From Dimorphilus gyrociliatus (lineage: Eukaryota; Animalia; Annelida): a stretch of DNA of 64,000 nucleotides. Position 1 is the first letter of the stretch, and every line of letters starts with the position of its first letter. Under the pieces are notes generated by a model. That model did no database searches and had not been told where the DNA came from. It worked only from the letters and a program-made list of their open reading frames with translations. The stretch spans positions 682,001-746,000 of the forward strand of contig CAJFCJ010000022.1 in assembly GCA_904063045.1 (NCBI GenBank). Reading direction: 5' to 3'. The position numbers and the translations under genes are program-made. Shown in pieces: positions 8,029 through 23,518 of the stretch.

Positions 8029-11000
8029 ATGGTTGATCTAGAATCAGTTCATGCTCTCATTGTAAATTGATTAATAGATGACACTCTGATTGCTATTGTT
8101 ACAAAAACTTACATTACGAATCAAGAAGACAAGTAAACATTACTAACATCTACAAACAGATAAGGCCGAGAGTTAATTTGCAAAGTGATATCCCTCCTGA
8201 TTTATCAAAATTATCTAACGCTCCTCCTCCTTCCAGTCCTGGGCCTTATAGAAAAACGGTCTGTATATATTCAATTCTATTTATTAGAACGCCTTTGTTC
8301 TTTTTTTTATCATTTTCAAGCTCTTTTTTGAAATAGTTTCGACGACGAAATTCCAATTCTCTTACCTACAAAAATGACGCTTTTGAAGGTGAAGGATCCG
8401 AAACTAGCTTTCGCCGTCAATCCTCTCTAAACTCAAGTAATAGGGTATGCTATTGCTCTACCATACTATTTTGATTTATTATATAATATTTCCCAGTTTT
8501 TTTTCTATATAACAAACCATAGGGACAAGATGGCGGATTCCTACAAAGGAGATTTTCGGTATTTACTTCTAAAATAAAACAACCGACGGTAACAATGAAA
8601 CAGAGACAAGAGTTTGACAATTACTCTAGTGTAAACTATATGCCTGCTCATAGCGATTTGTATCTCAGCTGGCTAAAGGAGCATCCCCTTAGAAGGTAAA
8701 CCTGCTTATTATCTATCTACCTTACCCTACAAAGTTTAAGTCAATATTTCTCTTCTTCCTTCCTTCTTAAAATCTATTTTCAAAATGTCAATTTTTCTCC
8801 TTCATCTCACCTTTCTCTCTCTCTCTCTTTCAATTAATTTTGTTTTCTATTCAATCAATCAATCACTAAGGTTGGACTGGGATCGATGGTTGCTCATGTC
8901 AATGATTGGCATTATTATAGGCCTTGTAGCCTTTCTCTTGAAACAAACTTTAGCTGTTTTAGATGACTTTAAATGGAATAGAGCCCGAGAACTCGCTTCA
9001 GTTAGTATTTTAGAAAAAATATCTCGATGAAGAAGAGAATCTCTCGAACACAATCGTTAGGTTTTATCTAGCCCTTTTTTCTTTTCTTTTTTTTAGGAGA
9101 GCATAATCAAGTGCTGGGGCTGGACTGCTGGCATTAGTATAGCTTTTGTCCTTATCAGTTCAATTATCATTGTCGTTAGTAGATAATTACTTTTAGATAA
9201 TCTCCAATGACTTTTATATGATAATAATTTTCTATCCTTTCTATAGTTCATTCATCCGCCTGCTGGAGGTAGTGGTGTTCCAGAAACCATCACTTTCCTT
9301 AATGGAATTGTAGTTCACAAAACTCAAACGTTACGTAACTTTATTGCGAAATTCGCGTCCGTTGTCTTTGCCGTATCTAGCGGACTTCCTTGCGCTATAC
9401 AAGGTCCAATAATTTCGTTAGGAGCGATTATTGGTTCCGGAGTAGGTCAATTTCAATCAAAGTCTTTAGGATTTCGACCAAACTGGTTTTCGAGATTTCG
9501 AAATGCCGAAGATCGTCGAACATTTACAACAGCTGGAGTTGCCGCAGGCGTAGCCGCAGCTTTCAATGCTCCTATCGGAGGTCTTCTCTTCGCAATGGAG
9601 GATTTATCTTCTCATTGGAATAGGAAATTATCTTGGCAAACGTTCTTTTGTTGTTGTATCTCCGTATCGGTTGCGAATTCTTTCAATTCGGCATTCGATA
9701 GATTCAAATGGCAAGGCAGTTTTGGATTATTTAACTTATGGGTTGCTGAGCCGATTCAAGTGAACATTCTTATGCTGCTTCCAGCCATTATTCTCGGATT
9801 GATAGGAGGAGTTCTAGGCGCCATATTCACAAGACTAAATGTCGCTATAATAGAATTACGAAAATTTCTATTCGGGAAGATAAAAAACTTGAATTTACAA
9901 AGATTAGCAAGAATAATTGAACCGTGCATTATAGTGGTATGTGGGAATTATTCGATCGATCAGAGATTATCCGATAATTATAAAAAAAAGACAATGATTC
10001 TTATAAAAGTATAAAAAAAGTTGAGATTCTCGTGATTATCCTACTCTATTTAAAGCAAAGAAACACAAAATCAATCAATCAAACAGTGATTAATGTACAA
10101 TGAAATGAACAAAACAAAAACCGTTGTTTTTCATACAGTTTATTATGTCGGTTATTGTCGTCTTAATGCCAAACGCTTTTCAATGTACTGAAGATAAATC
10201 TCGAGAAGGGAATATAACGGCTCCAATCTTGAAGCAATGCAATATGAGGTATGAATTTAATTATCTTTGACTTTTTCTTCTATATTTTCTTGAATAACTC
10301 TGATAAGGTGAAAAGAGTAACAACGTCAAAAAGGCAATGTTAAAGAAACATTTCAAAGGAATAGAGATAAAGAATTAGAGCATAAATGAAATAGTTTCTA
10401 CTAGTAGGATATCAGAAACAGTTGGAAAGATAACAAGGATAAGTCTTCCTACTCGATGTAGTTGAAATCTTTCTTTCTGTATTCATCTCTTTAGATATTT
10501 TTCCCTATCAATCCAACCGCCTCAATCATACGTAGACTCTCTTCCTCTCATTTCCATTTATAAATACTTTGGTATTTCTATATCTATTCCAGCTTAAATG
10601 ATTCTTCACTTTCTTGTAAAAAGAGAAAGGAATAGAATGTCGTTTAAAGAAAATTTGATTGATTAATATTTTTTCCTTTATAGAATTTTAAATGAATGTT
10701 TTTCTTTCTTGCCTTCAGCTTTAATACTTTTCAGCCAGATGAATTCTCATGTAAAGATAACTCAACTTACAATGAAGGTAAATTCTTCTTCTAATTCCAT
10801 TAACCTTCTTTTAACGCAACAGTTAACGGAGAATGTTTCTTCATCTTATCTAAACAACTTTACTTTTACTTAAAATTCTTTCACCTAACACAATCAACTT
10901 TCATTTTCTTCATTTATTGCAAATTCTCTTATAATCTTTTGCGATCTAACACCAACAAATTTTTGCAGCTGCTACCTTACTCGTCGGTTCGGGAAATAGA

Positions 11001-12971
11001 CTTTTAAGTCGATTAGTCTCTCGGGGAACGCACAGATGGTTTCATTATAGGACACTTTTAGCAATTCTTCCTGTATGGTTCTTCATGGTCTCTTGGACGG
11101 CAGGAACTTCGGTTGCCGGAGGAATTTTTGTACCAACATTGTAAACTTTCTTTTTCATATATCACTTCTAGATACAATTTAATCTTCTCTCCTCCATCAA
11201 CTGTAAACCTTTCAGATCTCATACAATTTCACATATTTAATTTAATTTCATACGCCTCTGCCAAAAATTTACTGTCTCTCTTTTTAAGAATATCGGGAGC
11301 TATTTACGGAAGAGCTTTTGGTCTTGCAATCTTAGATATTTATACCTCTCGGACCGGCCATCAATATCCGATAGATTCTTATTGGGAATGGATCGACCCA
11401 GGAGCGATAGCCATGCTTGGAGCGGGAAGTCTTCTCGGTGGTGTCACTAGACTATGTCTCGCCGTTACCATGATTATTGTTGAAATGTCACAAGACATCG
11501 ACTTTGTAATTCCAGTTATGATTAGCATTTGGTCCGCCAAGGTTGTCGCCGATCAACTAGCTTTACCTTTGTATAAATTCATGTTGAATATTAAATCTCT
11601 GCCATATTTGGACGCTGAAGCCGAAGTAGTAATTGACAATGAAATGTATTATCAAGTTTTCTTAACAGTTTGAATCTTTTATAATTACAACTGATTTCCT
11701 CGTTAGAGTCAACTTGGAATTGTACAAGGCAAGCCACATTATGGCGTCGTCTCCAAAAACCATTCATAGCGTTGAATCGCTGAGTACATTGGCAAGGCTA
11801 CTGTTGGGAACAAAGCACGGAGGATTTCCAGTTGTGAAATATGACGAAGTAACTAAAACCGATATTTGTTACGGACTGATAACGAGGTAGGAATTTACTC
11901 GATTTAATCCTCTAACAGCAACGGTAATCTCTTTGTTTATTTCTTTGTATGCGTTCTATCTACTACGAAAGGAATGAATTGTACATCGTTATGTGTTGCG
12001 ATGACGTCTACAACGAGGAGCAGATAGGCAAAACTGTCACTCCAACAATCGAATGGGAGAAGGTTCGTTCCTCGTATTGTTACTCTTTCGTTTTCCGTAT
12101 TATCGGATTGTTCACTTTTTCTTTTCACTTTCCATCAAAGTACATCGAAAGAGAATGACGAAAGTTTGATATTTAACTGAAAATGTACTGAAAAGACGTC
12201 TTTTTTTCTAATTTGTACAGATATCGGTGGATTATCTAACTGATCCTTCGGCTATGGAAGAAAGGGTAAGAACTTATACGAAATTCGACCAATATAGAAA
12301 CATCTACGTAAATTTGGTTAGTGTTTTTATTTGTCTTTATTGAAAGGCGTCTCTTGAATATAATTGAAAAATCATGTTTGTTTGTTTGTTTTCTAACTAT
12401 TCAGGAACAATTCATTGACAAAAGTTGTACGAAAGTTGATCAAGAATACTCTGTGCATAGAGTTTATACTCTGTTTAGGACATTGGGACTTCGGCATTTG
12501 CTTGTTATAGACTCGTTGAATAGAATAGTAGGAATCATAACTCGCAAAGATTTAATGAACTTCAATATTCACGAAAAATTATGTCTGTTTGAAAATAGCT
12601 TGAAAATCGATGATAATCTATTCATAAGTTCTGCTGGTTGTAGCATGGAGGAAAAAGGAGAGAAAGATAGTGTTGTTTATCAGATTCTACCTGCCGTAAC
12701 TATCCCTAGGATAGATGAGGAAATTGAGGAAGGGTCTAGAAAAAATACGATAACTTCATTTGATAGGGGAAGTGAAAGCGTAGCGGCTGAAACAGAAGTA
12801 AACGATGAGGAAACGTTGAATGAAATTTTAGAAAGTGGGGAGAATAGTAAGAGGTGTGAAGAGAATTTACGGAAGAATAGCTTGGAATTAAGGAACGTGA
12901 AAAGAATCTCAAAAAGTGATTCAGTCGTAAAATTTGATTTATCTTATACTGATGAAAAAACTAGACTTTAA
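8029..12971 (+). CDS. CLC-family chloride channel/transporter, copy A (ClC-6/7-related, C-terminal CBS pair), ~980 aa. Exons 8029-8061, 8160-8258, 8337-8444, 8523-8695, 8871-9000, 9097-9174, 9247-9936, 10139-10248, 10719-10777, 10969-11140, 11289-11645, 11707-11886, 11972-12062, 12221-12316, 12405-12971
   Basis: CLC signatures GSGVPE, AAAFNAPIGGLLFAMED, GGIFVP, GGVTRLCLAVTMIIVE, PLY, and CBS motifs HGGFPVV and LGLRHLLV. Exon lengths sum to 2943 nt with consistent phases. The first coding exon is less certain (alternative at 6593). Confidence 0.93.
11308..12487 (+). repeat. Near-identical segment shared with 18570-19749 (direct repeat, offset 7262)
   Basis: Line-by-line comparison: 1180 bp with only 2 mismatches seen (12355/19617 and 12376/19638), spanning four introns. 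Confidence 0.93.
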
Positions 12972-13086
12972 TCTTTTCTTTTATAATCCAATTTACTAAG
13001 ATTTTAATTGTATTTTCTTTAAAGTTGTATCTGTTAAAGACAGAAAGAAAGAGAGAGAGAGAGAGAAGGAAAAAGTGGCAAATTGA

Positions 13087-13126
13087 AATAAACGTAGTTA
13101 TACAGTTTGTTGTAATCACGAATAAA
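13087..13126 (+). other. Candidate polyadenylation signals of CLC copy A
   Basis: AATAAA at 13087 and 13121, 115-150 nt after the stop codon. Confidence 0.4.
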
Positions 13127-14388
13127 TAAAACTAGAAAAAAAAAAGAGTTAAAAATTATCTACATATATTTATTTAAAAAAGAAAATTGAGCGGTTGGCT
13201 AAAGCAAGCATTAGGTAGGCCTTGTACAGCGTAACTGTAATTATATATATATATATAGCCATTGAGTTAAGTATTAATAAATGAAAAAAAAAATTATCTC
13301 TTCGATATAAAAGAAGAAAATTTGAAGATAAAAATGAATGTATTTTTATAGTTTATGCTTGTCAGATGTGTGTAAACATTATGTTATATATTTCCTTGTA
13401 TACATAATGTTAATGTGTTCGTAGGCATATACATAAAATGTGTACATAGTATATGATATATATATGCAAGTACTTCGTTTTCTCTTAAGCAAACATACTA
13501 TATAATAGAGAAAATTGCGGATAGAGATTAGCTATGACTCATTTTTCCTTATAAAAAAATGTAAATAACCGTAAGAGACAAGATAAAGTGAATGAAGAAA
13601 GAATAAATATCTATTTTTAAATTATAGAAATAATATAAAGACTAAACGATAAATGTAAGGACGATTTTATCTTTAGTTCAAGTTCGATACTTCACAGGTA
13701 ACTATTAATAATATGTTGTACGAGTATGTATAAATGCATATATGTATCTATGTATGTATGTATTTACGCGCGCATCTATCCCTCTTCCTCCCTCTCTCTC
13801 TCTCTCTCTCTCTGTCTATCTCCCACTATGATCATTCACTCTGTATTTATTACTTTTATAACTGTAAACTATATAGATTTATATAATTATTTTGCCGTGT
13901 TCTGATGGACAATTAACAGCATTTTTATACATTTAATCATACTGGGATTTACTCTTAATTTACTAAATGTTTGCTTCATCGATGTATTATGTTTGCCCAT
14001 GATAACTAGGTCACCACGTGCTTTTTTTAGCCAAAAAAAATGAATTACAACTGCTAAAGAATATAGGCTATTTTAAAAAGTTAAATTAGAGTTAAAGAAA
14101 TATTGTTCGGTTTATTTTGCAGACATTTTCCATTTGCTGTTTATGCTTGCTTCTATATTACGATTTATTGATTAAAGATTGAACTATTAAGTTAAAAAAC
14201 ATGAAAGATATTTTAATTTGTTTATATAGATTCATATCTAGTTTTTATGTCGGTTTTTTTTATCTTTCTTGTTTCTAATGCTAGATGTTAATTTATTACT
14301 TTTACTTCTCTTCTTCCTTTTCCCCTTCTTTCTTCTGTTAAGAATAAACAAGGAAGAGAAAACGGTGTCGTCACAATTTCACCTTTGA

Positions 14389-17300
14389 ATGATGTCAATG
14401 TCGGATGTCCATCGAGTGGCTCTTGAGAATTCAACGACGGTTGGTAGAAATATTCTTTTCAGATTAGAAAATGTTTATTTATGACCTTTATTTATATTTT
14501 CCTTTTTTGTTCATTTTCAATAGATTAGGCCTAGAGGGAATCATCAATCAGAATCAGCATCCGATATTTTGAGACCAGGGAGCGTGTCAGGCAGTCCTGG
14601 AGGACTTCGAAAAGTAATATTCTTTCATATGCCCCCAGTTGTATTTTCGCAAAAATTACCTAAATTGAAAATTTATCGTCAAAGAATCGTGTCATTCTAG
14701 AGGTGAATGACCTAATGAGAGAAGAAGGACTTTTAAAAGAAATTTTTTATTTTATCCTTCGAGGGAATAAGATTTAAATAATTACATTTTTTCTTTCTTC
14801 TTTTTTGACTTGTTGAAAAAAGGGACGTTCTAGAAATTCTATGACATTTGTTAATGAAGGATTTGATGGCGGCGATTCTAATATTGACTCCTTCCGACGT
14901 CAATCATCCAGTAATTCCAGCAATAAAGTAAGTACAAAGTATTTTTAATTGCCATAATTTCGTATCATTCAATTACGTTATCTCTCTCTCTCTCTCTCTC
15001 TTTTCATGCATTCAATTTACACTATATAACTTGTCTGTGTGCTGTGTATTATTGTATATATTTTGTGCTTCTATTCCCTCAACACTCTAACAATTCAACC
15101 TACAGAACTTAGATCTGGCTGCGCCAACCTTTTGGGAAAGCATATCCCAATCTAAGCCTATTCAATCATTTTCTATTTGATTGCAACAACACTTATTGTC
15201 TATTCAAAAGATTTTGAAAAAAAACTCCAAGGCATATAAGACAAACAAATCTATTCCCGAGTTCCAATTTGTTCAATTACTTTCTTCCACCTAATTAGCT
15301 TATTGGACTCTGTCTTGCAATGTATGGAGAATATCTATTATCCAATTCGACAATCACTGTGAAGTCATTTCTATATGATTATCATAAATCTTACTAGTAT
15401 TGGGTACGAGTCTCATCCTAGACCGTTTTTTTTTCAATACATGAAACCGTTGTTGCTTCTCTCTCTCTCTCTCTTTCTGCTGTCTATCATTCCTCTTATT
15501 GTATTTTTCGTATTCCTTATTCTGATAATTGTTCATTAGGTGGCTTATTAAATTTTCTTTATCGAAATATGTGACGCGAATACAAGAGAAGAAGAAATAG
15601 GTTAACTGTAATTGTTCTTTTAGCTGAGCAGCTAATATTTTTAAACGTATTAGATCAACTTGTTTATTATTTTTTTAAGTAAGATTCTCTTATCAGATAA
15701 TTACAAAGTGTTTATTGCTGTTTTTGTATGTATTAACATACAGTATTGGTATATACAGTATATACAGTATATACAGTATATATACATGCATATGCATTAC
15801 TGTATAGTGTATATTGTCTGTTGATTGTCTTAACTACCAAACGAGGTATAATGACTTGACCTTAATACTATGATTATTAAGTTTATTACTAATAATTCTT
15901 ATAATTATCTGAATGAATTATTAAGCTATTTTCTTCATCATCTTGTAGTAAAACTCTTAAGAAACGATAATAATTTTTCTTAAATAACTTATTTTTTTTC
16001 AATCTCTTATCCGCTAAACAATTTTTTTTAAGAACACTTCTAGAGATACAACTAATGATAAGTCTATAATTAGAAATTCCTTCTTTCATTCTCTTCTTCT
16101 TCTTCTTCTTCTTCTTCTTCTTCTTTCACTGCTTCATTTGCATGCGCTTGTCTAATGCCTTAGTTATGTGTAGACGTAAACGCTATCGATTCTTAATTAT
16201 TATTCCATTCCCTTATCTGTTGTATTATCTTCTATTCTCTATCTACAGTCGCAAGAGGGTGGATTCTTCTACAGGAGATACTCACTTCATCTTTCCAAAG
16301 TAAAAACTCAAAATTTTACGTGGAAACAAAAACAAGAGATATCCAATTTCTCCGGTTTAAATTATATGCCGGCTCACAGCGATTTATACCTTAAGTGGCT
16401 TAACGAGCATCCTTTAAAACGGTATATAAACTATTGACCAATCACAATCATTTTAAAAAGGCCTATTATATTCTCCCCGTCACTGCTATTTCTTTAATTT
16501 GAAACAGTCTAGAATGGGATAGATGGATGCTAATGACAATTATCGGAATTTGCATAGGGCTTATGGCTTTTTTACTTAAGCAAATATTAGCCGTTCTGGG
16601 CGACGCCAAGTGGACAAAGGCACGTCAATTAGTAACGGTAAAAAATTTCATATTCAATTGAAATATTCCATAAAAAAGATATATCATTCTTTGCTGTTTT
16701 TTAATCATCGATTGAAAAAATTTAACGATTTCTCTTCGTCTCTTTTTACAGGAAAGCCTTCTTAAAAGTTGGGGATGGACGGCAGGTATTAGTGTTATCT
16801 TTGTTCTACTCAGTTCCATCCTAGTTGTTGTAAGTACTATTGATTAAAACTGTATGCTACCCGCAAAAAAACAACGGACAGAAAACAAACAAAGCAAAAC
16901 TCTGCTCATTTAGCCATTCATACATCATTTCTCTCTCTCTCTCTTTCTCTCAAAAAATGCCTTAATATTTAATATATTTGATTTTTTCACTCTTTTCTGT
17001 TTCCTCTTAACTTCATTTTCACTCTAAATCCCTTGCATTCGCTTCTTAGACAAACGCCTAACTTTCGAATTTTCTGCAGTTTGTTCATCCACCTGCTGGA
17101 GGCAGTGGCGTTCCAGAAACCATCACTTTCCTTAATGGAATTGTTATTCATCAAACGTTATCTCTCCGTAATTTCATTGTGAAATTCGCTTCCGTCGTCT
17201 TTGCAGTGTCCAGTGGACTACCAAGTTCAATTCAAGGTCCAATAATTTCGTTAGGAGGAATCGTTGGTTCCGGAGTAGGTCAATTTCAATCAAAGTCTTT

Positions 17301-20185
17301 AGGCTTTCAACCAAAATGCTTTTCGAGATTTCGAAATGCCGAAGATCGTCGAACATTTACAACAGCTGGAGTTGCCGCAGGCGTAGCCGCAGCTTTCAAT
17401 GCTCCTATCGGAGGTCTTCTCTTCGCAATGGAGGATTTATCTTCTCATTGGAATAGGAAATTATCTTGGCAAACGTTCTTTTGTTGTTGTATCTCCGTAT
17501 CGGTTGCGAATTCTTTCAATTCGGCATTCGATAGATTCAAATGGCAAGGCAGTTTTGGACTGTTTAGCCTATGGGTTGCCGAACCAACTCAAGTGAACAT
17601 TCTCCTGCTGATTCCAGCCATTATTCTCGGATTGATAGGAGGAGTTCTAGGCGCAATATTCACAAGACTAAATGTCGCTATAATAGAATTACGAAAATTT
17701 CTATTCGGGAAGATAAAAAACTTGAATTTACAAAGATTAGTACAGATAATCGAGCCTTGCATCATAGTGGTAAGATAACTTTTATCTATGCTAATATAGA
17801 AAGTTTTTTAGTCTGAAAGTATTGAATAATTCCATTAAACAATAAATGTTTTTTCTCTTCCCGCTAAAAGTTAATCATGACAATATTTGTGATTCTGATG
17901 CCTTCCGCCTTTAAATGTACGCAAAATAGTGGTCTGGACCAGAATGAAACCAGTATCTTAGCTCGCCAGTGTAACTTAACGTAAGTAGCGGAATTTTAAA
18001 TGAACGGCAAAAGCAAGTATTTAAAACTTCTCTCGAATATATTCAGCTTACACATTTTTCAACCTGACGAATACATTTGTGATAATAACTCATCTTACAA
18101 TGAAGGTAACAGACAGGACTGTCCATATTCTCTAAAACAATTCTATTCATAAATATTGGCATTTATCCATTGACATTAACATCATTTAAACGACAAAACC
18201 ATTTTGCAGCCGCAACTTTACTCATTGGTTCTGGAAATAGGCTCTTATCTCGACTGGTCTCTCGAGGAACACACAGGTGGTTTCATTATAAGACACTATT
18301 AGCCATTTTACCCGTATGGTTTTTTATGCTATCTTGGACAACGGGAACATCAGTAGCCGGAGGAACATTTGTGCCAATACTGTAATATTCTAAATATATT
18401 GATAATTGCAAACAAACACAACGAAAAGTCGCTCTATATTAATTGACGCCCTTTGTCATATTCTATATATATAATTCGTTTCTCTCATACATACATTAAT
18501 CTTTCTTATCAATATTTCATCAAGCAATTATATAACATTTATATCTTTAGAGTGTCTGGGGCTCTCTATGGAAGAGCTTTTGGTCTTGCAATCTTAGATA
18601 TTTATACCTCTCGGACCGGCCATCAATATCCGATAGATTCTTATTGGGAATGGATCGACCCAGGAGCGATAGCCATGCTTGGAGCGGGAAGTCTTCTCGG
18701 TGGTGTCACTAGACTATGTCTCGCCGTTACCATGATTATTGTTGAAATGTCACAAGACATCGACTTTGTAATTCCAGTTATGATTAGCATTTGGTCCGCC
18801 AAGGTTGTCGCCGATCAACTAGCTTTACCTTTGTATAAATTCATGTTGAATATTAAATCTCTGCCATATTTGGACGCTGAAGCCGAAGTAGTAATTGACA
18901 ATGAAATGTATTATCAAGTTTTCTTAACAGTTTGAATCTTTTATAATTACAACTGATTTCCTCGTTAGAGTCAACTTGGAATTGTACAAGGCAAGCCACA
19001 TTATGGCGTCGTCTCCAAAAACCATTCATAGCGTTGAATCGCTGAGTACATTGGCAAGGCTACTGTTGGGAACAAAGCACGGAGGATTTCCAGTTGTGAA
19101 ATATGACGAAGTAACTAAAACCGATATTTGTTACGGACTGATAACGAGGTAGGAATTTACTCGATTTAATCCTCTAACAGCAACGGTAATCTCTTTGTTT
19201 ATTTCTTTGTATGCGTTCTATCTACTACGAAAGGAATGAATTGTACATCGTTATGTGTTGCGATGACGTCTACAACGAGGAGCAGATAGGCAAAACTGTC
19301 ACTCCAACAATCGAATGGGAGAAGGTTCGTTCCTCGTATTGTTACTCTTTCGTTTTCCGTATTATCGGATTGTTCACTTTTTCTTTTCACTTTCCATCAA
19401 AGTACATCGAAAGAGAATGACGAAAGTTTGATATTTAACTGAAAATGTACTGAAAAGACGTCTTTTTTTCTAATTTGTACAGATATCGGTGGATTATCTA
19501 ACTGATCCTTCGGCTATGGAAGAAAGGGTAAGAACTTATACGAAATTCGACCAATATAGAAACATCTACGTAAATTTGGTTAGTGTTTTTATTTGTCTTT
19601 ATTGAAAGGCGTCTCTCGAATATAATTGAAAAATCATTTTTGTTTGTTTGTTTTCTAACTATTCAGGAACAATTCATTGACAAAAGTTGTACGAAAGTTG
19701 ATCAAGAATACTCTGTGCATAGAGTTTATACTCTGTTTAGGACATTGGGGCTTCGGCATTTGGTAGTCATAGATTGTTGGAATAGTGTTGTTGGAATTAT
19801 AACTCGTAAAGATTTAATGAATTATCACTTAAATGAGAGATTGAGCCTCGTTGAGAGTAGTTGGAAAGTGGAAGAACAAATAACTAACACTAGTAACGAA
19901 GATAAAGGAGACAATTCTGCCTACCAAATCCTTCCTGCTGTAACAATTTCAAGAATAGAGGAAGAAACTGAGGAGACTTCTAGAAAAAATACGATATCCT
20001 CAGTCGATGAAGAGGCTGATGGAAAGGACAGGAAAGACGAAAATGGCAATGCAAAGAGTCCCGCTAAAGAGGGGGAAATGAAGGAAAGTTTTCAAGTCGT
20101 AACAGAGGTTAAAATGAGAAGCAATAATAGAGCTAAAGGAAATGAAGAAGCGGTTAGTGACGAAAGAGAAAAAAGTGATAGCTAG
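14389..20185 (+). CDS. CLC-family chloride channel/transporter, copy B (tandem paralogue of A), ~966 aa. Exons 14389-14439, 14524-14613, 14823-14927, 16249-16421, 16508-16637, 16752-16829, 17080-17769, 17871-17980, 18047-18105, 18210-18381, 18551-18907, 18969-19148, 19234-19324, 19483-19578, 19667-20185
   Basis: Same 15-exon layout and phases as copy A; internal exons 4-14 have identical lengths. Same CLC motifs. Open reading frame of 2901 nt. Confidence 0.93.
15739..15804. repeat. Cluster of TACAGTA/TACTGTA heptamers, including a (TATACAGTA)x3 tandem
   Basis: Copies at 15739, 15754, 15763, 15772, 15798. Confidence 0.85.
18570..19749 (+). repeat. Second copy of the near-identical CLC segment (11308-12487)
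   Basis: Same comparison as above. Confidence 0.93.
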
Positions 20186-20725: not shown

Positions 20726-23518
20726 TCAAGAACATATCTGCTTTTCGACTCTTTCAAAGTCCATATTGAACATATCAATTGAAGAATTTGCTGTTGCTTT
20801 CATCTCACGCCAGCCTTCGTCGACAATACTCCATATTTTTCGATTCCTTTCAACAGTTTCTTCGAGAGGCTTTGCTGCCGGAAACAATTTTCCCAATATT
20901 CTGAAAACTGGTAAGGCGATTCTATCCAAGAAATTCACTTGGTCTTCACTTATGTTTGCTCTTTGCCTGTCCATTTGAACGCTTGGTGTTATACCTTGAG
21001 CTTTCTCCATATCTCCTTGAGAGAAGAATTCATTATAGATCAAATTTGCAACAGTTTTAGAATTACTAAAGCACTTTGCTTGATCGGATAGATCGGAACA
21101 AGTTATCAGTAAAGATCTTAGGAGGTACTGGTGTTTTTTGTTAGTCTTAACAAATCCGCTGTCGGCCATTTTTTCCTGATCCTTAACTAAATTTAAGTGT
21201 AGACCTAAATCTGTCGCTAAAATGATATCTCTCATCAACTCTACAATTCTCTCGTAGTTCTCCGAGCTCAAATTTTCAAAAATGTTACAATCGGCACTGT
21301 TCAATATGCAGAGAGTTTGATTAAAATGATGTCTTTCCATAACAGATCCCTCGGAACTGTAGAGTGTGGCTAAAACTGTTTTCTATGAAAAAGAGAAATA
21401 CAATTAGCATTTGGCATCTATTTTGCATTTGAAGAGAGGAACATACAAAGTGCTTTTGATAAGCGTTGGTTGTTCCTCGATGGTCGATATCGTGGCATAA
21501 TCCGGCAACTGTTAGAGCTAAGCAGTCTAAATCGCTGCGAAATTAGAATAAAGAAAGGTCATATTAATTGGGGTTTTTTTTATTTGATTGGCGTTGAAAG
21601 GAAGGAAATAAGGAAGGAAGGAAGGAAAGTAAAGAGAAATGAGAGATGAATACTTACTCCATGTAATTGGACAAACCAAAATTTTTATACATAACATAGC
21701 AGAAATGCGCAACGGAGAAGGCGTGAACCCAATTGTGATAGGGTGGATCTCTATATCCTTTTCTTACCATTAACACAAAACGAGCCAATTTTGGTTTAGA
21801 AATACGAAATTTGCTTATAAAATTCATATCTTCTAGCATGGCGATAAAAGCCTGAAATAGAGAAGAATGACGATAATTTAGAAAAGAGGGGAATGAGAGA
21901 AAGAAAGAATTGCAGATTTGCAAGACAGATAGAAATTGAAAGAACAATATACAATATATACAATAAGGGGAATGCATTACTGTACGCTGTATACTCTATA
22001 CTGAATACTGAATACCAAACATATGAAAGGTAGAAAATATCAATTGTACAATCAGCATAGGCTGCTTTATAGTACAAGTAATATACTTTATTCTGTCTAC
22101 AGACCAGATTAAGTACTCTGTACTGTATAATTTACAAAGGGTCGATTAGATAATTACTCTTCCTAGTAGGGTTTTCTCCCTTAATTAGATAACGGCACCA
22201 GAATTAATTACCATTAAACTAATTACTAATAAAATTAGATTTTAATTTTTATCTTACCATGGCCATTTCATTTTCGGAAAGAATTCTCGGTAGAAACGAC
22301 AACGAATCAAGTTCCGGATGAATTTCTTTCACTGAAGGATTCTGATTTCTGGTGAGTTGTTGATAATCTTCCGTACATACCTAAATGATAACGGCGATGA
22401 AGAGGCGGAAGGGGAAAAAAGAGGGAATTTTAAAAATAAGACAAAATTGAGAGGCTGGCCCAAGATGAATAGATTAATAGTTGGAGCCGAGCACGTTGGT
22501 CTAAAAATAGAGATAATCACCTGCATATGATAAAGCATCAACTCGTTGGATAATTGAGTTCTGTGTTGCGATTCTCTAACTTTTTTGTAGAGGATACTCT
22601 GTGTTGTCGGTATTAAAAGGGGGAAAAGAAATGTCTTTAAATACTGAATACGCCTATTATTCCCTATTGTATAGCCCAAAAGTAAAATAATGACTACTTA
22701 CGTGCATTATGCTTATGCAGCAATAAACGGAGAAAGCCTGGGCAATTTCAATGTCGTTAGCAGTGAAACCGGCGGCGTTGATTTTATTACATAATTGAGC
22801 TACTCCAACGACAACGTCTGAAATATCAGTCTTGTTTATTATATACAATTCACCGTTATTCAATATGGTAATTTCTATCATACTATTTTCATCCTTAATG
22901 GGAAAGCAGAGTATATTTCTCGTTCGGAAACCCGTACTCTCATCAACGCCTCTATAGAAAAGGTCGTGTGAATAGGCATCGTCTATGTTGAGTATTTCTC
23001 CTAATTGAATAAACAAAAGGCTGGTAAAATGTTCGTTTCTAGGCTAAAAGTATCACAATGACTACCAGTCGTTGCCACGTGGCCAGCTATTCCTTGAGAT
23101 GCAGGTATACGAATTTCATTGCGGCTCTCCTGTCGGTCGTTCTCTCCGCTGTCGAATACTTTGGCGACGAGTTCATCGGTTTCCTTCTCCAAAAGAAAGA
23201 CCGAACATCTAAAGGAGAAATAACGAATAGTTTATCGTTTTAGACGGCGTGCAAATGCATCCATAAGAGGCTTACGACGTTAACATACTACAATCATGCA
23301 CCAGCCTTGGCTTATTACTGGAAAATTTAATGTAAAAGAATTCCCTGTAGGCTAAACATAATCAGAAAAATGCATGCCGAGTCAGCACTACAACACGAGT
23401 TATAGGATCCTGTTATATCAACATTATTCTCCCCCTCTCTCCTCCTTTTATGTTTTCATAATTAACCACCATAACGATTTCTTATCGATCTATGCCTAGA
23501 TTGATAATCGTCTTCTCT

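What the first reader, a model, noticed from the sequence alone, without database searches (positions are those of the whole stretch)
8029..20185. Tandem pair of intact CLC genes that both have Gln instead of the gating glutamate
Seen: at the start of helix F, where CLCs read G-K/R/P-E-G-P-x-x-H, copy A reads GLPCAIQGPIISLG (CAA at 9400-9402) and copy B reads GLPSSIQGPIISLG (CAA at 17233-17235). Flanking codons differ between copies (TGC GCT ATA vs AGT TCA ATT), so Q is shared outside the homogenised tracts and is unlikely to be a base-calling error. The Cl-coordinating Ser (GSGVP) and Tyr (PLY, 11572-11574) are kept and both ORFs are intact. Established: neutralising this Glu (E148Q/A in ClC-ec1, E166 in ClC-0, equivalents in ClC-5/7) abolishes H+ coupling and fast gating and leaves a passive anion conductance. 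Natural absence is rare; the ClC-K channels have Val there. Inference: a ClC-6/7-related exchanger lineage converted into an uncoupled, possibly constitutively open anion channel and then duplicated.
Basis: partly seen in the sequence, partly recalled or inferred. Interest (0 to 1): 0.85.

Follow-up and report, generated by a model that had tools for sequence, protein, structure and literature searches.

The report
Annelid CLC genes with glutamine gate
Two neighbouring, expressed chloride-transporter (CLC) genes of the tiny marine worm Dimorphilus gyrociliatus belong to an old annelid-only subfamily in which both proton-handling glutamates of the parent Cl-/H+ exchanger have changed (outer Glu to Gln, inner Glu to Asp). 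They most likely carry anions passively without proton coupling, which nobody has yet measured.

Summary
CAA (Gln) sits at 9400-9402 and 17233-17235, and it aligns without gaps to the gating Glu of ClC-7 and ClC-6. Ser (GSGVP), GxFxP and Tyr (PLY) are kept.

The window is from Dimorphilus gyrociliatus; the genes are DgyrCDS12999 (A) and DgyrCDS13000 (B). Spliced RNA contigs cover the A codon with no differences and confirm 10 of A's 11 introns. Letters specific to B are also present in the RNA. B has all 12 homologous exons intact, although its annotation skips three; its start codon was not found.

The Gln is not a Dimorphilus novelty. It is fixed in an 8-member clade (100/100 support): named members from Capitella (also a tandem pair), Paralvinella and Helobdella, plus two unattributed metagenome/metatranscriptome sequences. 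The clade branches from canonical annelid 'CLC-C-like' (GPEGP) genes. It is not a ClC-6/7 orthologue.

Only 9 sites are fixed differently between this clade and 19 canonical relatives. They include both proton-transfer glutamates: outer E to Q and inner E to D.

The A/B duplication is younger and lineage-specific. It is under purifying selection and patched by gene conversion.

Most likely function: an H+-uncoupled passive anion conductance, inferred from mutant data. I found no paper describing this clade. The scan has not noted it on other DNA. I rate it a new variant of a known kind, of moderate interest.

The parts
8523..12971 (+). CLC gene copy A (DgyrCDS12999, P0154, 876 aa as annotated from ATG 8595). 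Exons: 8523/8595-8695, 8871-9000, 9097-9174, 9247-9936, 10139-10248, 10719-10777, 10969-11140, 11289-11645, 11707-11886, 11972-12062, 12221-12316, 12405-12971.
   Evidence: The exon set translates exactly to P0154. Ten introns appear as GT..AG joints in spliced RNA contigs. Pfam: Voltage_CLC 1.3e-72 and CBS. The AF2 model matches ClC-7 with TM 0.89-0.90.
8029..8444 (+). Probable upstream coding exons of copy A (8337-8444, and possibly 8029-8061 holding the true ATG). The reading frame stays open and is conserved with copy B and Capitella upstream of the annotated ATG.
   Evidence: An RNA contig continues 206 nt upstream of 8522, and its last 30 letters match 8414-8443. A/B protein similarity begins at 8526/16252. 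Exon 8029-8061 is inferred only.
9400..9402 (+). CAA = Gln at the gating-glutamate (Glu_ext) position of copy A (Q155 of P0154).
   Evidence: Covered by a spliced RNA contig with 0 differences.
9601..9603 (+). GAT = Asp at the inner proton-glutamate (Glu_in) position of copy A (D222 of P0154), in the motif FAMEDL.
9271..9273 (+). AGT = central Ser of GSGVP, copy A (kept).
11572..11574 (+). TAT = central Tyr (PLY) of helix R, copy A (kept).
16252..20185 (+). CLC gene copy B (DgyrCDS13000, P0001). Rebuilt exons: 16252-16421, 16508-16637, 16752-16829, 17080-17769, 17871-17980, 18047-18105, 18210-18381, 18551-18907, 18969-19148, 19234-19324, 19483-19578, 19667-20185. The start codon lies further upstream and was not found.
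   Evidence: Eleven of the 12 exons match copy A in length, all introns are GT-AG, and there are no stops. The public model P0001 omits 16252-16421, 18047-18105 and 18210-18381, the last of which encodes GxFxP. B-specific letters appear in an RNA contig.
17233..17235 (+). CAA = Gln at the gating-glutamate position of copy B.
17434..17436 (+). GAT = Asp at the inner proton-glutamate position of copy B.
11283..12559 (+). Gene-conversion tract shared with 18546-19821 (98.2% identity, introns included). A second identical tract is 9487-9726 = 17320-17559.
   Evidence: blastn, difference list, and zero nucleotide differences over codons 481-720.

Best explanation
Copies A and B are real, expressed paralogues of an annelid-specific CLC subfamily. 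The subfamily arose by duplication of the canonical annelid 'CLC-C-like' gene. That parent carries both glutamates that mark Cl-/H+ exchangers (GPEGP gate and FAMEEV).

On the stem of the subfamily both proton-transfer residues changed: the outer gating Glu became Gln and the inner proton Glu became Asp.

An amide side chain at the outer gate cannot be protonated or deprotonated, so it cannot shuttle H+. In the ClC-ec1 E148Q crystal structure it swings out of the external anion site. I therefore infer that the proteins move anions down their electrochemical gradient without H+ coupling and with little voltage or pH gating.

In Dimorphilus the inner constriction (Ser of GSGVP, Tyr of PLY) and GxFxP are intact. 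The expected behaviour is a Cl--selective, uncoupled, transporter-like conductance rather than a wide-open channel. In the other members of the clade the Ser is also lost (GGGT/Ax), and in Capitella and Paralvinella the Tyr is Phe, which may take them further towards a channel.

Shown here: sequence, alignment, expression, phylogeny and selection. Inferred: the transport mode.
For: - Gapless alignment of Gln to the gating Glu of ClC-7 and ClC-6.
- CLC fold and domains.
- A spliced transcript carries CAA with 0 differences, and B-specific letters are also transcribed.
- dN/dS is about 0.1 in unconverted segments where dS exceeds 1.
- Gln is present in 8 of 8 members of a 100/100 clade on a long stem of 0.9-1.3 substitutions per site. 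The clade is sister to the canonical annelid E-type genes.
- Only 9 sites are fixed differently between the clade and 19 canonical relatives. They include Glu_ext (E>Q), Glu_in (E>D) and the residue next to it.
- Among 326 homologues scored at this column there were 312 Glu, 10 Gln, 2 Asp, 1 Gly and 1 Arg.
- Literature: E148Q and the equivalent neutralisations in ClC-5 and ClC-7 give uncoupled passive Cl- conductance (PMC5362633). In the E148Q structure the gate is open with an extra Cl- bound (PMC2266597).
Against: - No functional measurement exists for any member of the clade or of the parent CLC-C-like clade.
- A carboxylate (Asp) is strictly conserved at the inner proton site across the whole clade. 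This is unexpected if proton handling were simply abandoned: CLC channels have Val there, and E203D still supports coupling in ClC-ec1.
- Neutralising Glu_ext does not by itself make a fast channel (PMC4769167).
- The Gln codon of copy B was not seen in RNA.
- Subcellular location and partners are unknown.
Confidence: 0.6

Rival explanations
1. The proteins are regulatory or 'silent' subunits. They have lost useful transport and act mainly by dimerising with each other or with other CLCs, or as CBS-domain nucleotide sensors, to modify a partner's activity.
For: CLCs are obligate dimers. The two gene-conversion tracts (P0154 residues about 158-337 and 458-697; counted as 181-360 and 481-720, which numbers from 8526) appear to cover the dimer-interface helices and CBS1; I inferred that from the ClC-7 alignment and did not map it. 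The stem branch is long and evolution in the TM domain is faster than in canonical genes: 52% against 63% mean identity between species. The central Ser is lost in the other members of the clade.
Against: The anion-pathway motifs GSGVP, GxFxP and PLY are intact in Dimorphilus. The gate segment Q-G/A-P is invariant. Selection is purifying. No canonical E-type CLC-C-like partner from Dimorphilus turned up in two database searches.
Confidence: 0.15
2. The proteins are still coupled, or differently coupled, transporters. Proton or substrate coupling persists through the conserved inner Asp and another route, or the change retunes substrate preference (for example nitrate or another anion) rather than abolishing coupling.
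For: Asp at Glu_in is invariant in 8 of 8 members. E203D keeps coupling in ClC-ec1. The ClC-7 proton-glutamate mutant E312A retains residual transport (PMC7681918, title and abstract seen). Ser_cen, which affects Cl-/NO3- preference, is changed in the other members of the clade.
Against: Every tested neutralisation of Glu_ext (ClC-ec1, ClC-5, ClC-7) removes H+ coupling. No new conserved acidic residue appears among the 9 clade-specific fixed differences.
Confidence: 0.15
3. The finding is an artefact or decay: an assembly error, collapsed haplotypes, or pseudogenes that happen to share a substitution.
For: Near-identical tracts between the copies could suggest an assembly duplication. The public model for B is incomplete.
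Against: Outside the converted tracts dS is saturated and the C-termini differ. Both copies keep 12 open exons with GT-AG introns. Both are represented in spliced RNA contigs. The same Gln is found in four other annelid genera or sources.
Confidence: 0.02

Closest known systems
Metazoan 'chloride channel protein C-like' CLCs (GPEGP gate motif), e.g. Capitella CAPTEDRAFT_215079, Ridgeia NP493_51g02024, and proteins from Ciona, sea urchin, cnidarians and reptiles/amphibians
   Same: This is the parent clade by phylogeny. It shares 42-44% identity, the same domain layout (Voltage_CLC plus two CBS domains) and the same GSGxP and PLY motifs.
   Different: Canonical members have Glu at both proton sites (19 of 19); the window's subfamily has Gln and Asp. 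The canonical metazoan members shown read S-G-L-V-V-P where the Gln clade has G-G-I-F-V-P. As far as I could find, the parent clade is itself uncharacterised functionally.
ClC-7 and ClC-6 (lysosomal/endosomal 2Cl-/H+ exchangers)
   Same: They are the best solved-structure matches by sequence (E 4e-38) and by fold (TM 0.85-0.90). They belong to the same broad branch of the family.
   Different: The window's genes are not orthologues: they fall outside the ClC-7 clade (100/99). ClC-6/7 read GKEGP and LEE. Their 'unc' behaviour comes only from engineered Glu_ext mutants.
ClC-ec1 E148Q/E148A, ClC-5 E211A/Q and the ClC-7 gating-glutamate 'unc' mutant (engineered or disease neutralisations of the gating glutamate)
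   Same: The same residue change at the same position. These mutants are the basis for predicting uncoupled passive anion conductance.
   Different: Those are single mutations in otherwise wild-type exchangers. Here the change is natural, fixed across a deep clade, and accompanied by Glu_in>Asp and seven other fixed changes.
ClC-Ka/Kb (Val at the gate) and the plant CLC-G subfamily (gating Glu substituted)
   Same: Both are natural CLCs lacking the gating glutamate. ClC-K shows near-linear, weakly gated currents. CLC-G is predicted to be a channel on this criterion (PMC7733266).
   Different: These are independent origins with different residues (Val or another, not Gln). ClC-K sits in the channel branch and has Val at Glu_in. 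The annelid clade keeps a carboxylate at Glu_in.
Engineered 'channel-like' ClC-ec1 E148A/Y445S(A)
   Same: In the other members of the clade the outer gate (Gln) and the inner constriction are both altered (Ser>Gly throughout, Tyr>Phe in Capitella and Paralvinella). This resembles the two-gate removal that gives fast uncoupled Cl- flux.
   Different: Dimorphilus keeps Ser and Tyr. Y445F on its own is well coupled in ClC-ec1. The resemblance is only a lead.

Membership tests
CLC family (Voltage_CLC, PF00654) | Voltage_CLC transmembrane domain above the Pfam gathering score | tested here: met
   P0154 scores 245 bits against a cutoff of 24.8. The exon pieces of both copies also match.
CLC family (Voltage_CLC, PF00654) | Eukaryotic layout with a C-terminal CBS pair, and the CLC fold | tested here: met
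   CBS hit. AF2 model has pLDDT 83 and pTM 0.81. Top PDB matches are ClC-7, AtCLCa and ClC-6, with TM 0.84-0.90 normalised by target.
CLC family (Voltage_CLC, PF00654) | Anion-pathway motifs GSGxP, GxFxP and the central Tyr | tested here: met
   GSGVP, GGIFVP/GGTFVP and PLY are present in both copies.
CLC Cl-/H+ exchanger class | Glutamate at the external gating position (E148 of ClC-ec1) | tested here: not met
   Gln in both copies and in all 8 clade members.
CLC Cl-/H+ exchanger class | Glutamate at the internal proton-transfer position (E203 of ClC-ec1) | tested here: not met
   Asp (FAMEDL) in all 8 members. The residue is still a carboxylate, and E203D supports coupling in ClC-ec1.
CLC Cl-/H+ exchanger class | Measured stoichiometric Cl-/H+ exchange | not testable with these tools
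   Needs electrophysiology or flux assays.
CLC channel branch (ClC-0/1/2/K) | Phylogenetic placement with the ClC-0/1/2/K group | tested here: not met
   ClC-1, ClC-2 and ClC-K are far weaker matches (E 1e-15 to 1e-19) than ClC-7 and ClC-6 (1e-37 to 1e-38). The tree places the genes inside the CLC-C-like clade.
CLC channel branch (ClC-0/1/2/K) | Non-protonatable residue (Val) at the Glu_in position | tested here: not met
   Asp is present there.
ClC-6/ClC-7 orthologue group | Falls inside the ClC-7/6 clade, with GKEGP and LEE motifs | tested here: not met
   Falls outside the ClC-7 clade (100/99). The motifs differ.
Metazoan CLC-C-like clade | Nested within the clade on a maximum-likelihood tree | tested here: met
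   The Gln clade is sister to the canonical annelid members: 88/94 with Lineus included, and 95/91 on unconverted columns.
Metazoan CLC-C-like clade | Gate motif G-P-E-G-P-M-I-H and FAMEEV | tested here: not met
   A has AIQGPIIS, B has SIQGPIIS, and both have FAMEDL.

The most novel reading that the evidence does not exclude
The annelid Gln clade would be a natural, stepwise conversion of a 2Cl-/H+ exchanger into a true anion channel. The outer gate and proton relay were disabled first (the state kept in Dimorphilus: Gln, Asp, with Ser and Tyr intact). The inner constriction eroded later (Ser>Gly in the other members of the clade, then Tyr>Phe in Capitella and Paralvinella). Living species would then hold successive intermediates of the exchanger-to-channel transition, which so far has only been produced by engineering ClC-ec1.
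Probability: 0.3. Interest if true: 0.75.

Novelty: new variant of a known kind. Interest (0 to 1): 0.55.

Why it matters
How CLC exchangers turned into channels is a long-standing question. It has been approached mainly with engineered mutants (E148Q/A, E148A/Y445S) and with the already fully diverged ClC-0/1/2/K channels.

Here is a natural subfamily inside the exchanger branch. It is conserved across deep annelid divergences. Its few fixed differences from its exchanger parent are concentrated on the two proton-transfer residues, and related species differ in how much of the inner gate remains.

Expressing the Dimorphilus and Capitella proteins, together with the canonical Capitella paralogue as a control, would test directly three things:
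- whether Gln at the gate is enough for uncoupling in a native context;
- what the conserved inner Asp is for;
- whether loss of Ser and Tyr raises throughput.

It would also give a first function for the metazoan CLC-C-like family, which mammals appear to lack.

Tried and rejected
- Assembly or base-calling error: rejected. The spliced RNA contig has 0 differences over the copy A codon, and the same Gln occurs in other annelids.
- RNA editing to Glu: rejected. No alternative letters were reported near 9400, and CAA to GAA would need C>G, which known editing enzymes do not make (own knowledge).
- A misaligned glutamate elsewhere at the gate: rejected. The alignment from GSGVP to the gate is gapless, and no new conserved acidic residue is among the 9 clade-specific sites.
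- An ancient tandem pair shared with Capitella and hidden by concerted evolution: tested on unconverted columns only. A and B remain sisters (100/99), so the duplications are independent.
- ClC-6/7 orthology: rejected by the tree.
- Canonical E-type CLC-C-like gene in Dimorphilus: none appeared. This is not proof of absence, because only the 8000 candidates sharing most words were scored.
- RNA runs X1-X3 held only short, 90-95% similar fragments from other organisms and added nothing.
- P0083 could not be traced to a contig. The source organisms of P0004, P0085 and P0156 remain unknown.
- Literature searches for a described natural Gln gate or for annelid CLCs found nothing relevant.

Full report
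**What is in the sequence**

Searches confirm the two CAA codons at 9400-9402 and 17233-17235. The three preceding codons differ between the copies (TGC GCT ATA in A, AGT TCA ATT in B).

Both lie in a roughly 690-nt exon that matches Pfam Voltage_CLC (E about 1e-41). A phmmer search of the copy A exon against all PDB sequences gives ClC-7 (4e-38) and ClC-6 (7e-37) as best hits. From GSGVP through the gate the alignment has no gap, so ...GLPCAIQGPIISLG lies over ClC-7 ...GLAVGKEGPMIHSG. The Gln is therefore at the gating-glutamate (Glu_ext) column.

The same alignment shows that the inner 'proton' glutamate column (LEE in ClC-7) reads MED. The second Glu is Asp in both copies. GxFxP (GGIFVP in A, GGTFVP in B) and the helix-R Tyr (PLY) align to their ClC-7 counterparts.

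**Identity of the locus and gene models**

An exhaustive HMMER search and an exact look-up identify the window as Dimorphilus gyrociliatus, a meiofaunal annelid. Copy B is DgyrCDS13000 (P0001, 743 aa). Copy A is DgyrCDS12999 (P0154, 876 aa).

The 12-exon structure of A reproduces P0154 exactly. P0001 omits three exons. Mapped from copy A, B has 12 exons; the 11 upstream of the last match A in length. All introns are GT-AG and there is no stop. One of the skipped exons encodes GxFxP.

In both copies the frame stays open and conserved upstream of A's annotated ATG. The true N-termini therefore lie in upstream exons. For A these are 8337-8444 and perhaps 8029-8061. For B they were not found. 'Intact' is shown for A and for the conserved body of B; B's start is not shown.

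**Expression**

Of four runs offered, X4 holds contigs of the same organism: 16 of 17 laid contigs are at least 99% alike, and they are spliced. Ten GT..AG joints coincide with A's introns.

One contig joins 9174 to 9247 and runs to 9726 with 0 differences, so the A transcript carries CAA. No alternative letter is reported near 9400.

A second contig differs from A at eleven places between 9727 and 9778. Each of these is the copy B letter, so B is transcribed too. B's own Gln codon was not covered, because only one read-laying run of at most 6 kb was allowed.

The contigs break exactly where a 240-nt tract identical in A and B (9487-9726) ends.

One non-canonical joint (9907>11308, CA..AC) is probably an assembly chimera at A/B-identical sequence.

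**Paralogy and selection**

blastn between the copies gives 91% identity over the large exon and 98.2% over 11283-12559 against 18546-19821, introns included.

Codon analysis gives overall dN 0.13 and dS 0.53. The values are strongly mosaic:
- zero differences over codons 481-720;
- dS 0.07-0.25 over codons 181-360;
- dS from about 0.9 to above 2, with dN mostly 0.08-0.43 (0.92 in the divergent C-terminal tail), elsewhere.

The segment holding the Gln codon has dN 0.09 and dS 1.1. So the copies are old paralogues under purifying selection, patched by conversion, and the Gln is not simply a by-product of homogenisation.

**How widespread is the Gln?**

I scored the gate column in all homologues fetched. 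It was Glu in 312, Gln in 10, Asp in 2, Gly in 1 and Arg in 1. Eight of the ten Gln proteins form one group that also shares FAMEDL:
- the two Dimorphilus genes;
- Capitella teleta CAPTEDRAFT_205673 and 205672;
- a Paralvinella palmiformis protein;
- a Helobdella robusta fragment;
- two environmental sequences, one of them an intronless 3.7-kb metatranscriptome-like contig encoding a full 884-aa protein.

The Capitella pair is also a head-to-tail tandem.

In maximum-likelihood trees (LG+C20) the eight form a 100/100 clade on a long stem (0.9-1.3 substitutions per site). The clade sits inside the metazoan 'chloride channel protein C-like' family. That family has a GPEGPMIH gate and FAMEEV, and is separate from the ClC-7 clade.

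The Gln clade is sister to the canonical annelid genes (Capitella CAPTEDRAFT_215079, Ridgeia). Support is 88/94 with the nemertean Lineus included. On columns outside the conversion tracts it is 95/91, with Lineus outside.

A and B are sisters, and so are the two Capitella genes, even on unconverted columns (100/99). The tandem duplications are therefore independent and later than the E>Q change. Capitella keeps a canonical E-type paralogue. None from Dimorphilus appeared in two searches, which is suggestive but not conclusive.

**What changed with the Gln**

I compared the 8 Gln-clade sequences with 19 canonical relatives. Only nine columns are invariant within the clade and conserved to a different residue in the relatives. 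They include Glu_ext (E>Q, 8/8 against 19/19), Glu_in (E>D, 8/8 against 19/19) and the residue after it (V>L). The fixed divergence is thus concentrated on the proton pathway.

Within the clade the inner constriction changes stepwise:
- Dimorphilus, the first branch, keeps GSGVP and PLY.
- All other members read GGGT/A-x, so the Ser is lost.
- Capitella and Paralvinella additionally have PLF.

**Mechanism**

The following is established in the literature.
- Neutralising Glu_ext (E148Q/A in ClC-ec1, E211A in ClC-5, the ClC-7 'unc' mutant) abolishes H+ coupling and voltage dependence and leaves a passive Cl- conductance (PMC5362633).
- In the E148Q structure the side chain leaves the external site, and a Cl- ion takes its place (PMC2266597).
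- E148A alone still turns over slowly like a transporter. Removing both Glu_ext and Tyr445 gives fast, channel-like flux (PMC4769167).
- Y445F stays coupled (PMC2151619).
- E203D keeps coupling.

From this I infer that the Dimorphilus proteins are H+-uncoupled, weakly gated passive anion conductors, still with a transporter-like inner constriction. I put the probability at about 0.6. The strict conservation of a carboxylate at Glu_in is unexplained by this reading, and it keeps alive two rivals: a residual or altered coupling mechanism, and a regulatory role.

**Comparison with what is known, and novelty**

Natural loss of the gating glutamate is known in ClC-K (Val) and in the plant CLC-G subfamily. 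The principle is therefore not new.

What appears undescribed is an animal subfamily inside the exchanger branch with Gln at the gate plus Asp at the proton site, conserved across annelids. Four literature searches found nothing on it. The proteins exist in databases only as unnamed predictions.

Structure prediction confirms an ordinary CLC fold closest to ClC-7, AtCLCa and ClC-6.

I rate it a new variant of a known kind with interest 0.55. It is a clean, testable natural experiment, not a new category.

Noticed in passing
window 16252-16421, 18047-18105, 18210-18381: The public model of copy B (DgyrCDS13000) skips three conserved, open exons with GT-AG borders. One of them encodes the GxFxP pore motif. 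The model also starts at an internal Met (16527).
   Followed up: yes
window 8029-8595: Copy A's annotated ATG (8595) is probably internal. The frame is open and conserved with copy B and Capitella upstream of it, and an RNA contig splices 8444 to 8523 from an upstream exon.
   Followed up: partly
window 9487-9726 = 17320-17559, and 11283-12559 = 18546-19821: There are two homogenised tracts between the paralogues: one 100% identical and one 98.2% identical including introns. Together they appear to cover the helices that form the CLC dimer interface plus CBS1. This could keep A and B able to dimerise with each other; that is an idea, not tested.
   Followed up: partly
window 9907 > 11308: One RNA contig shows a non-canonical joint (CA..AC, skipping 1400 nt) between points that flank A/B-identical sequence. 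It is probably an assembler chimera.
   Followed up: no
window 20726-21340 (- strand): An exon of a 3'5'-cyclic nucleotide phosphodiesterase gene (PDEase_I, E 6e-45) lies just downstream of copy B on the other strand.
   Followed up: partly
L005 10001-20926 (Capitella teleta KB310954.1): Capitella also has its two Gln-type CLC genes in head-to-tail tandem. The trees say this duplication is independent of the Dimorphilus one.
   Followed up: yes
proteins P0083 and P0085 (sources unknown; L003): A second, unrelated long-branch pair of CLC-C-like relatives also has Gln at the gate (AQGP, MQGP). Their proton glutamate is replaced by Ser or Gln. This looks like an independent loss of both glutamates.
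   Followed up: partly
proteins P0265-P0281 (reptile and amphibian 'chloride channel protein C-like'): Vertebrate members of the CLC-C-like family read PSGLP at the Ser motif, and the six turtle sequences read PYGLP, with Tyr in place of the central Ser. Both glutamates are kept.
   Followed up: no
alignment: Canonical metazoan CLC-C-like proteins have Val where GxFxP normally has Phe (SGLVVP). The Gln clade, the green-algal relatives and ClC-7 all have Phe.
   Followed up: no
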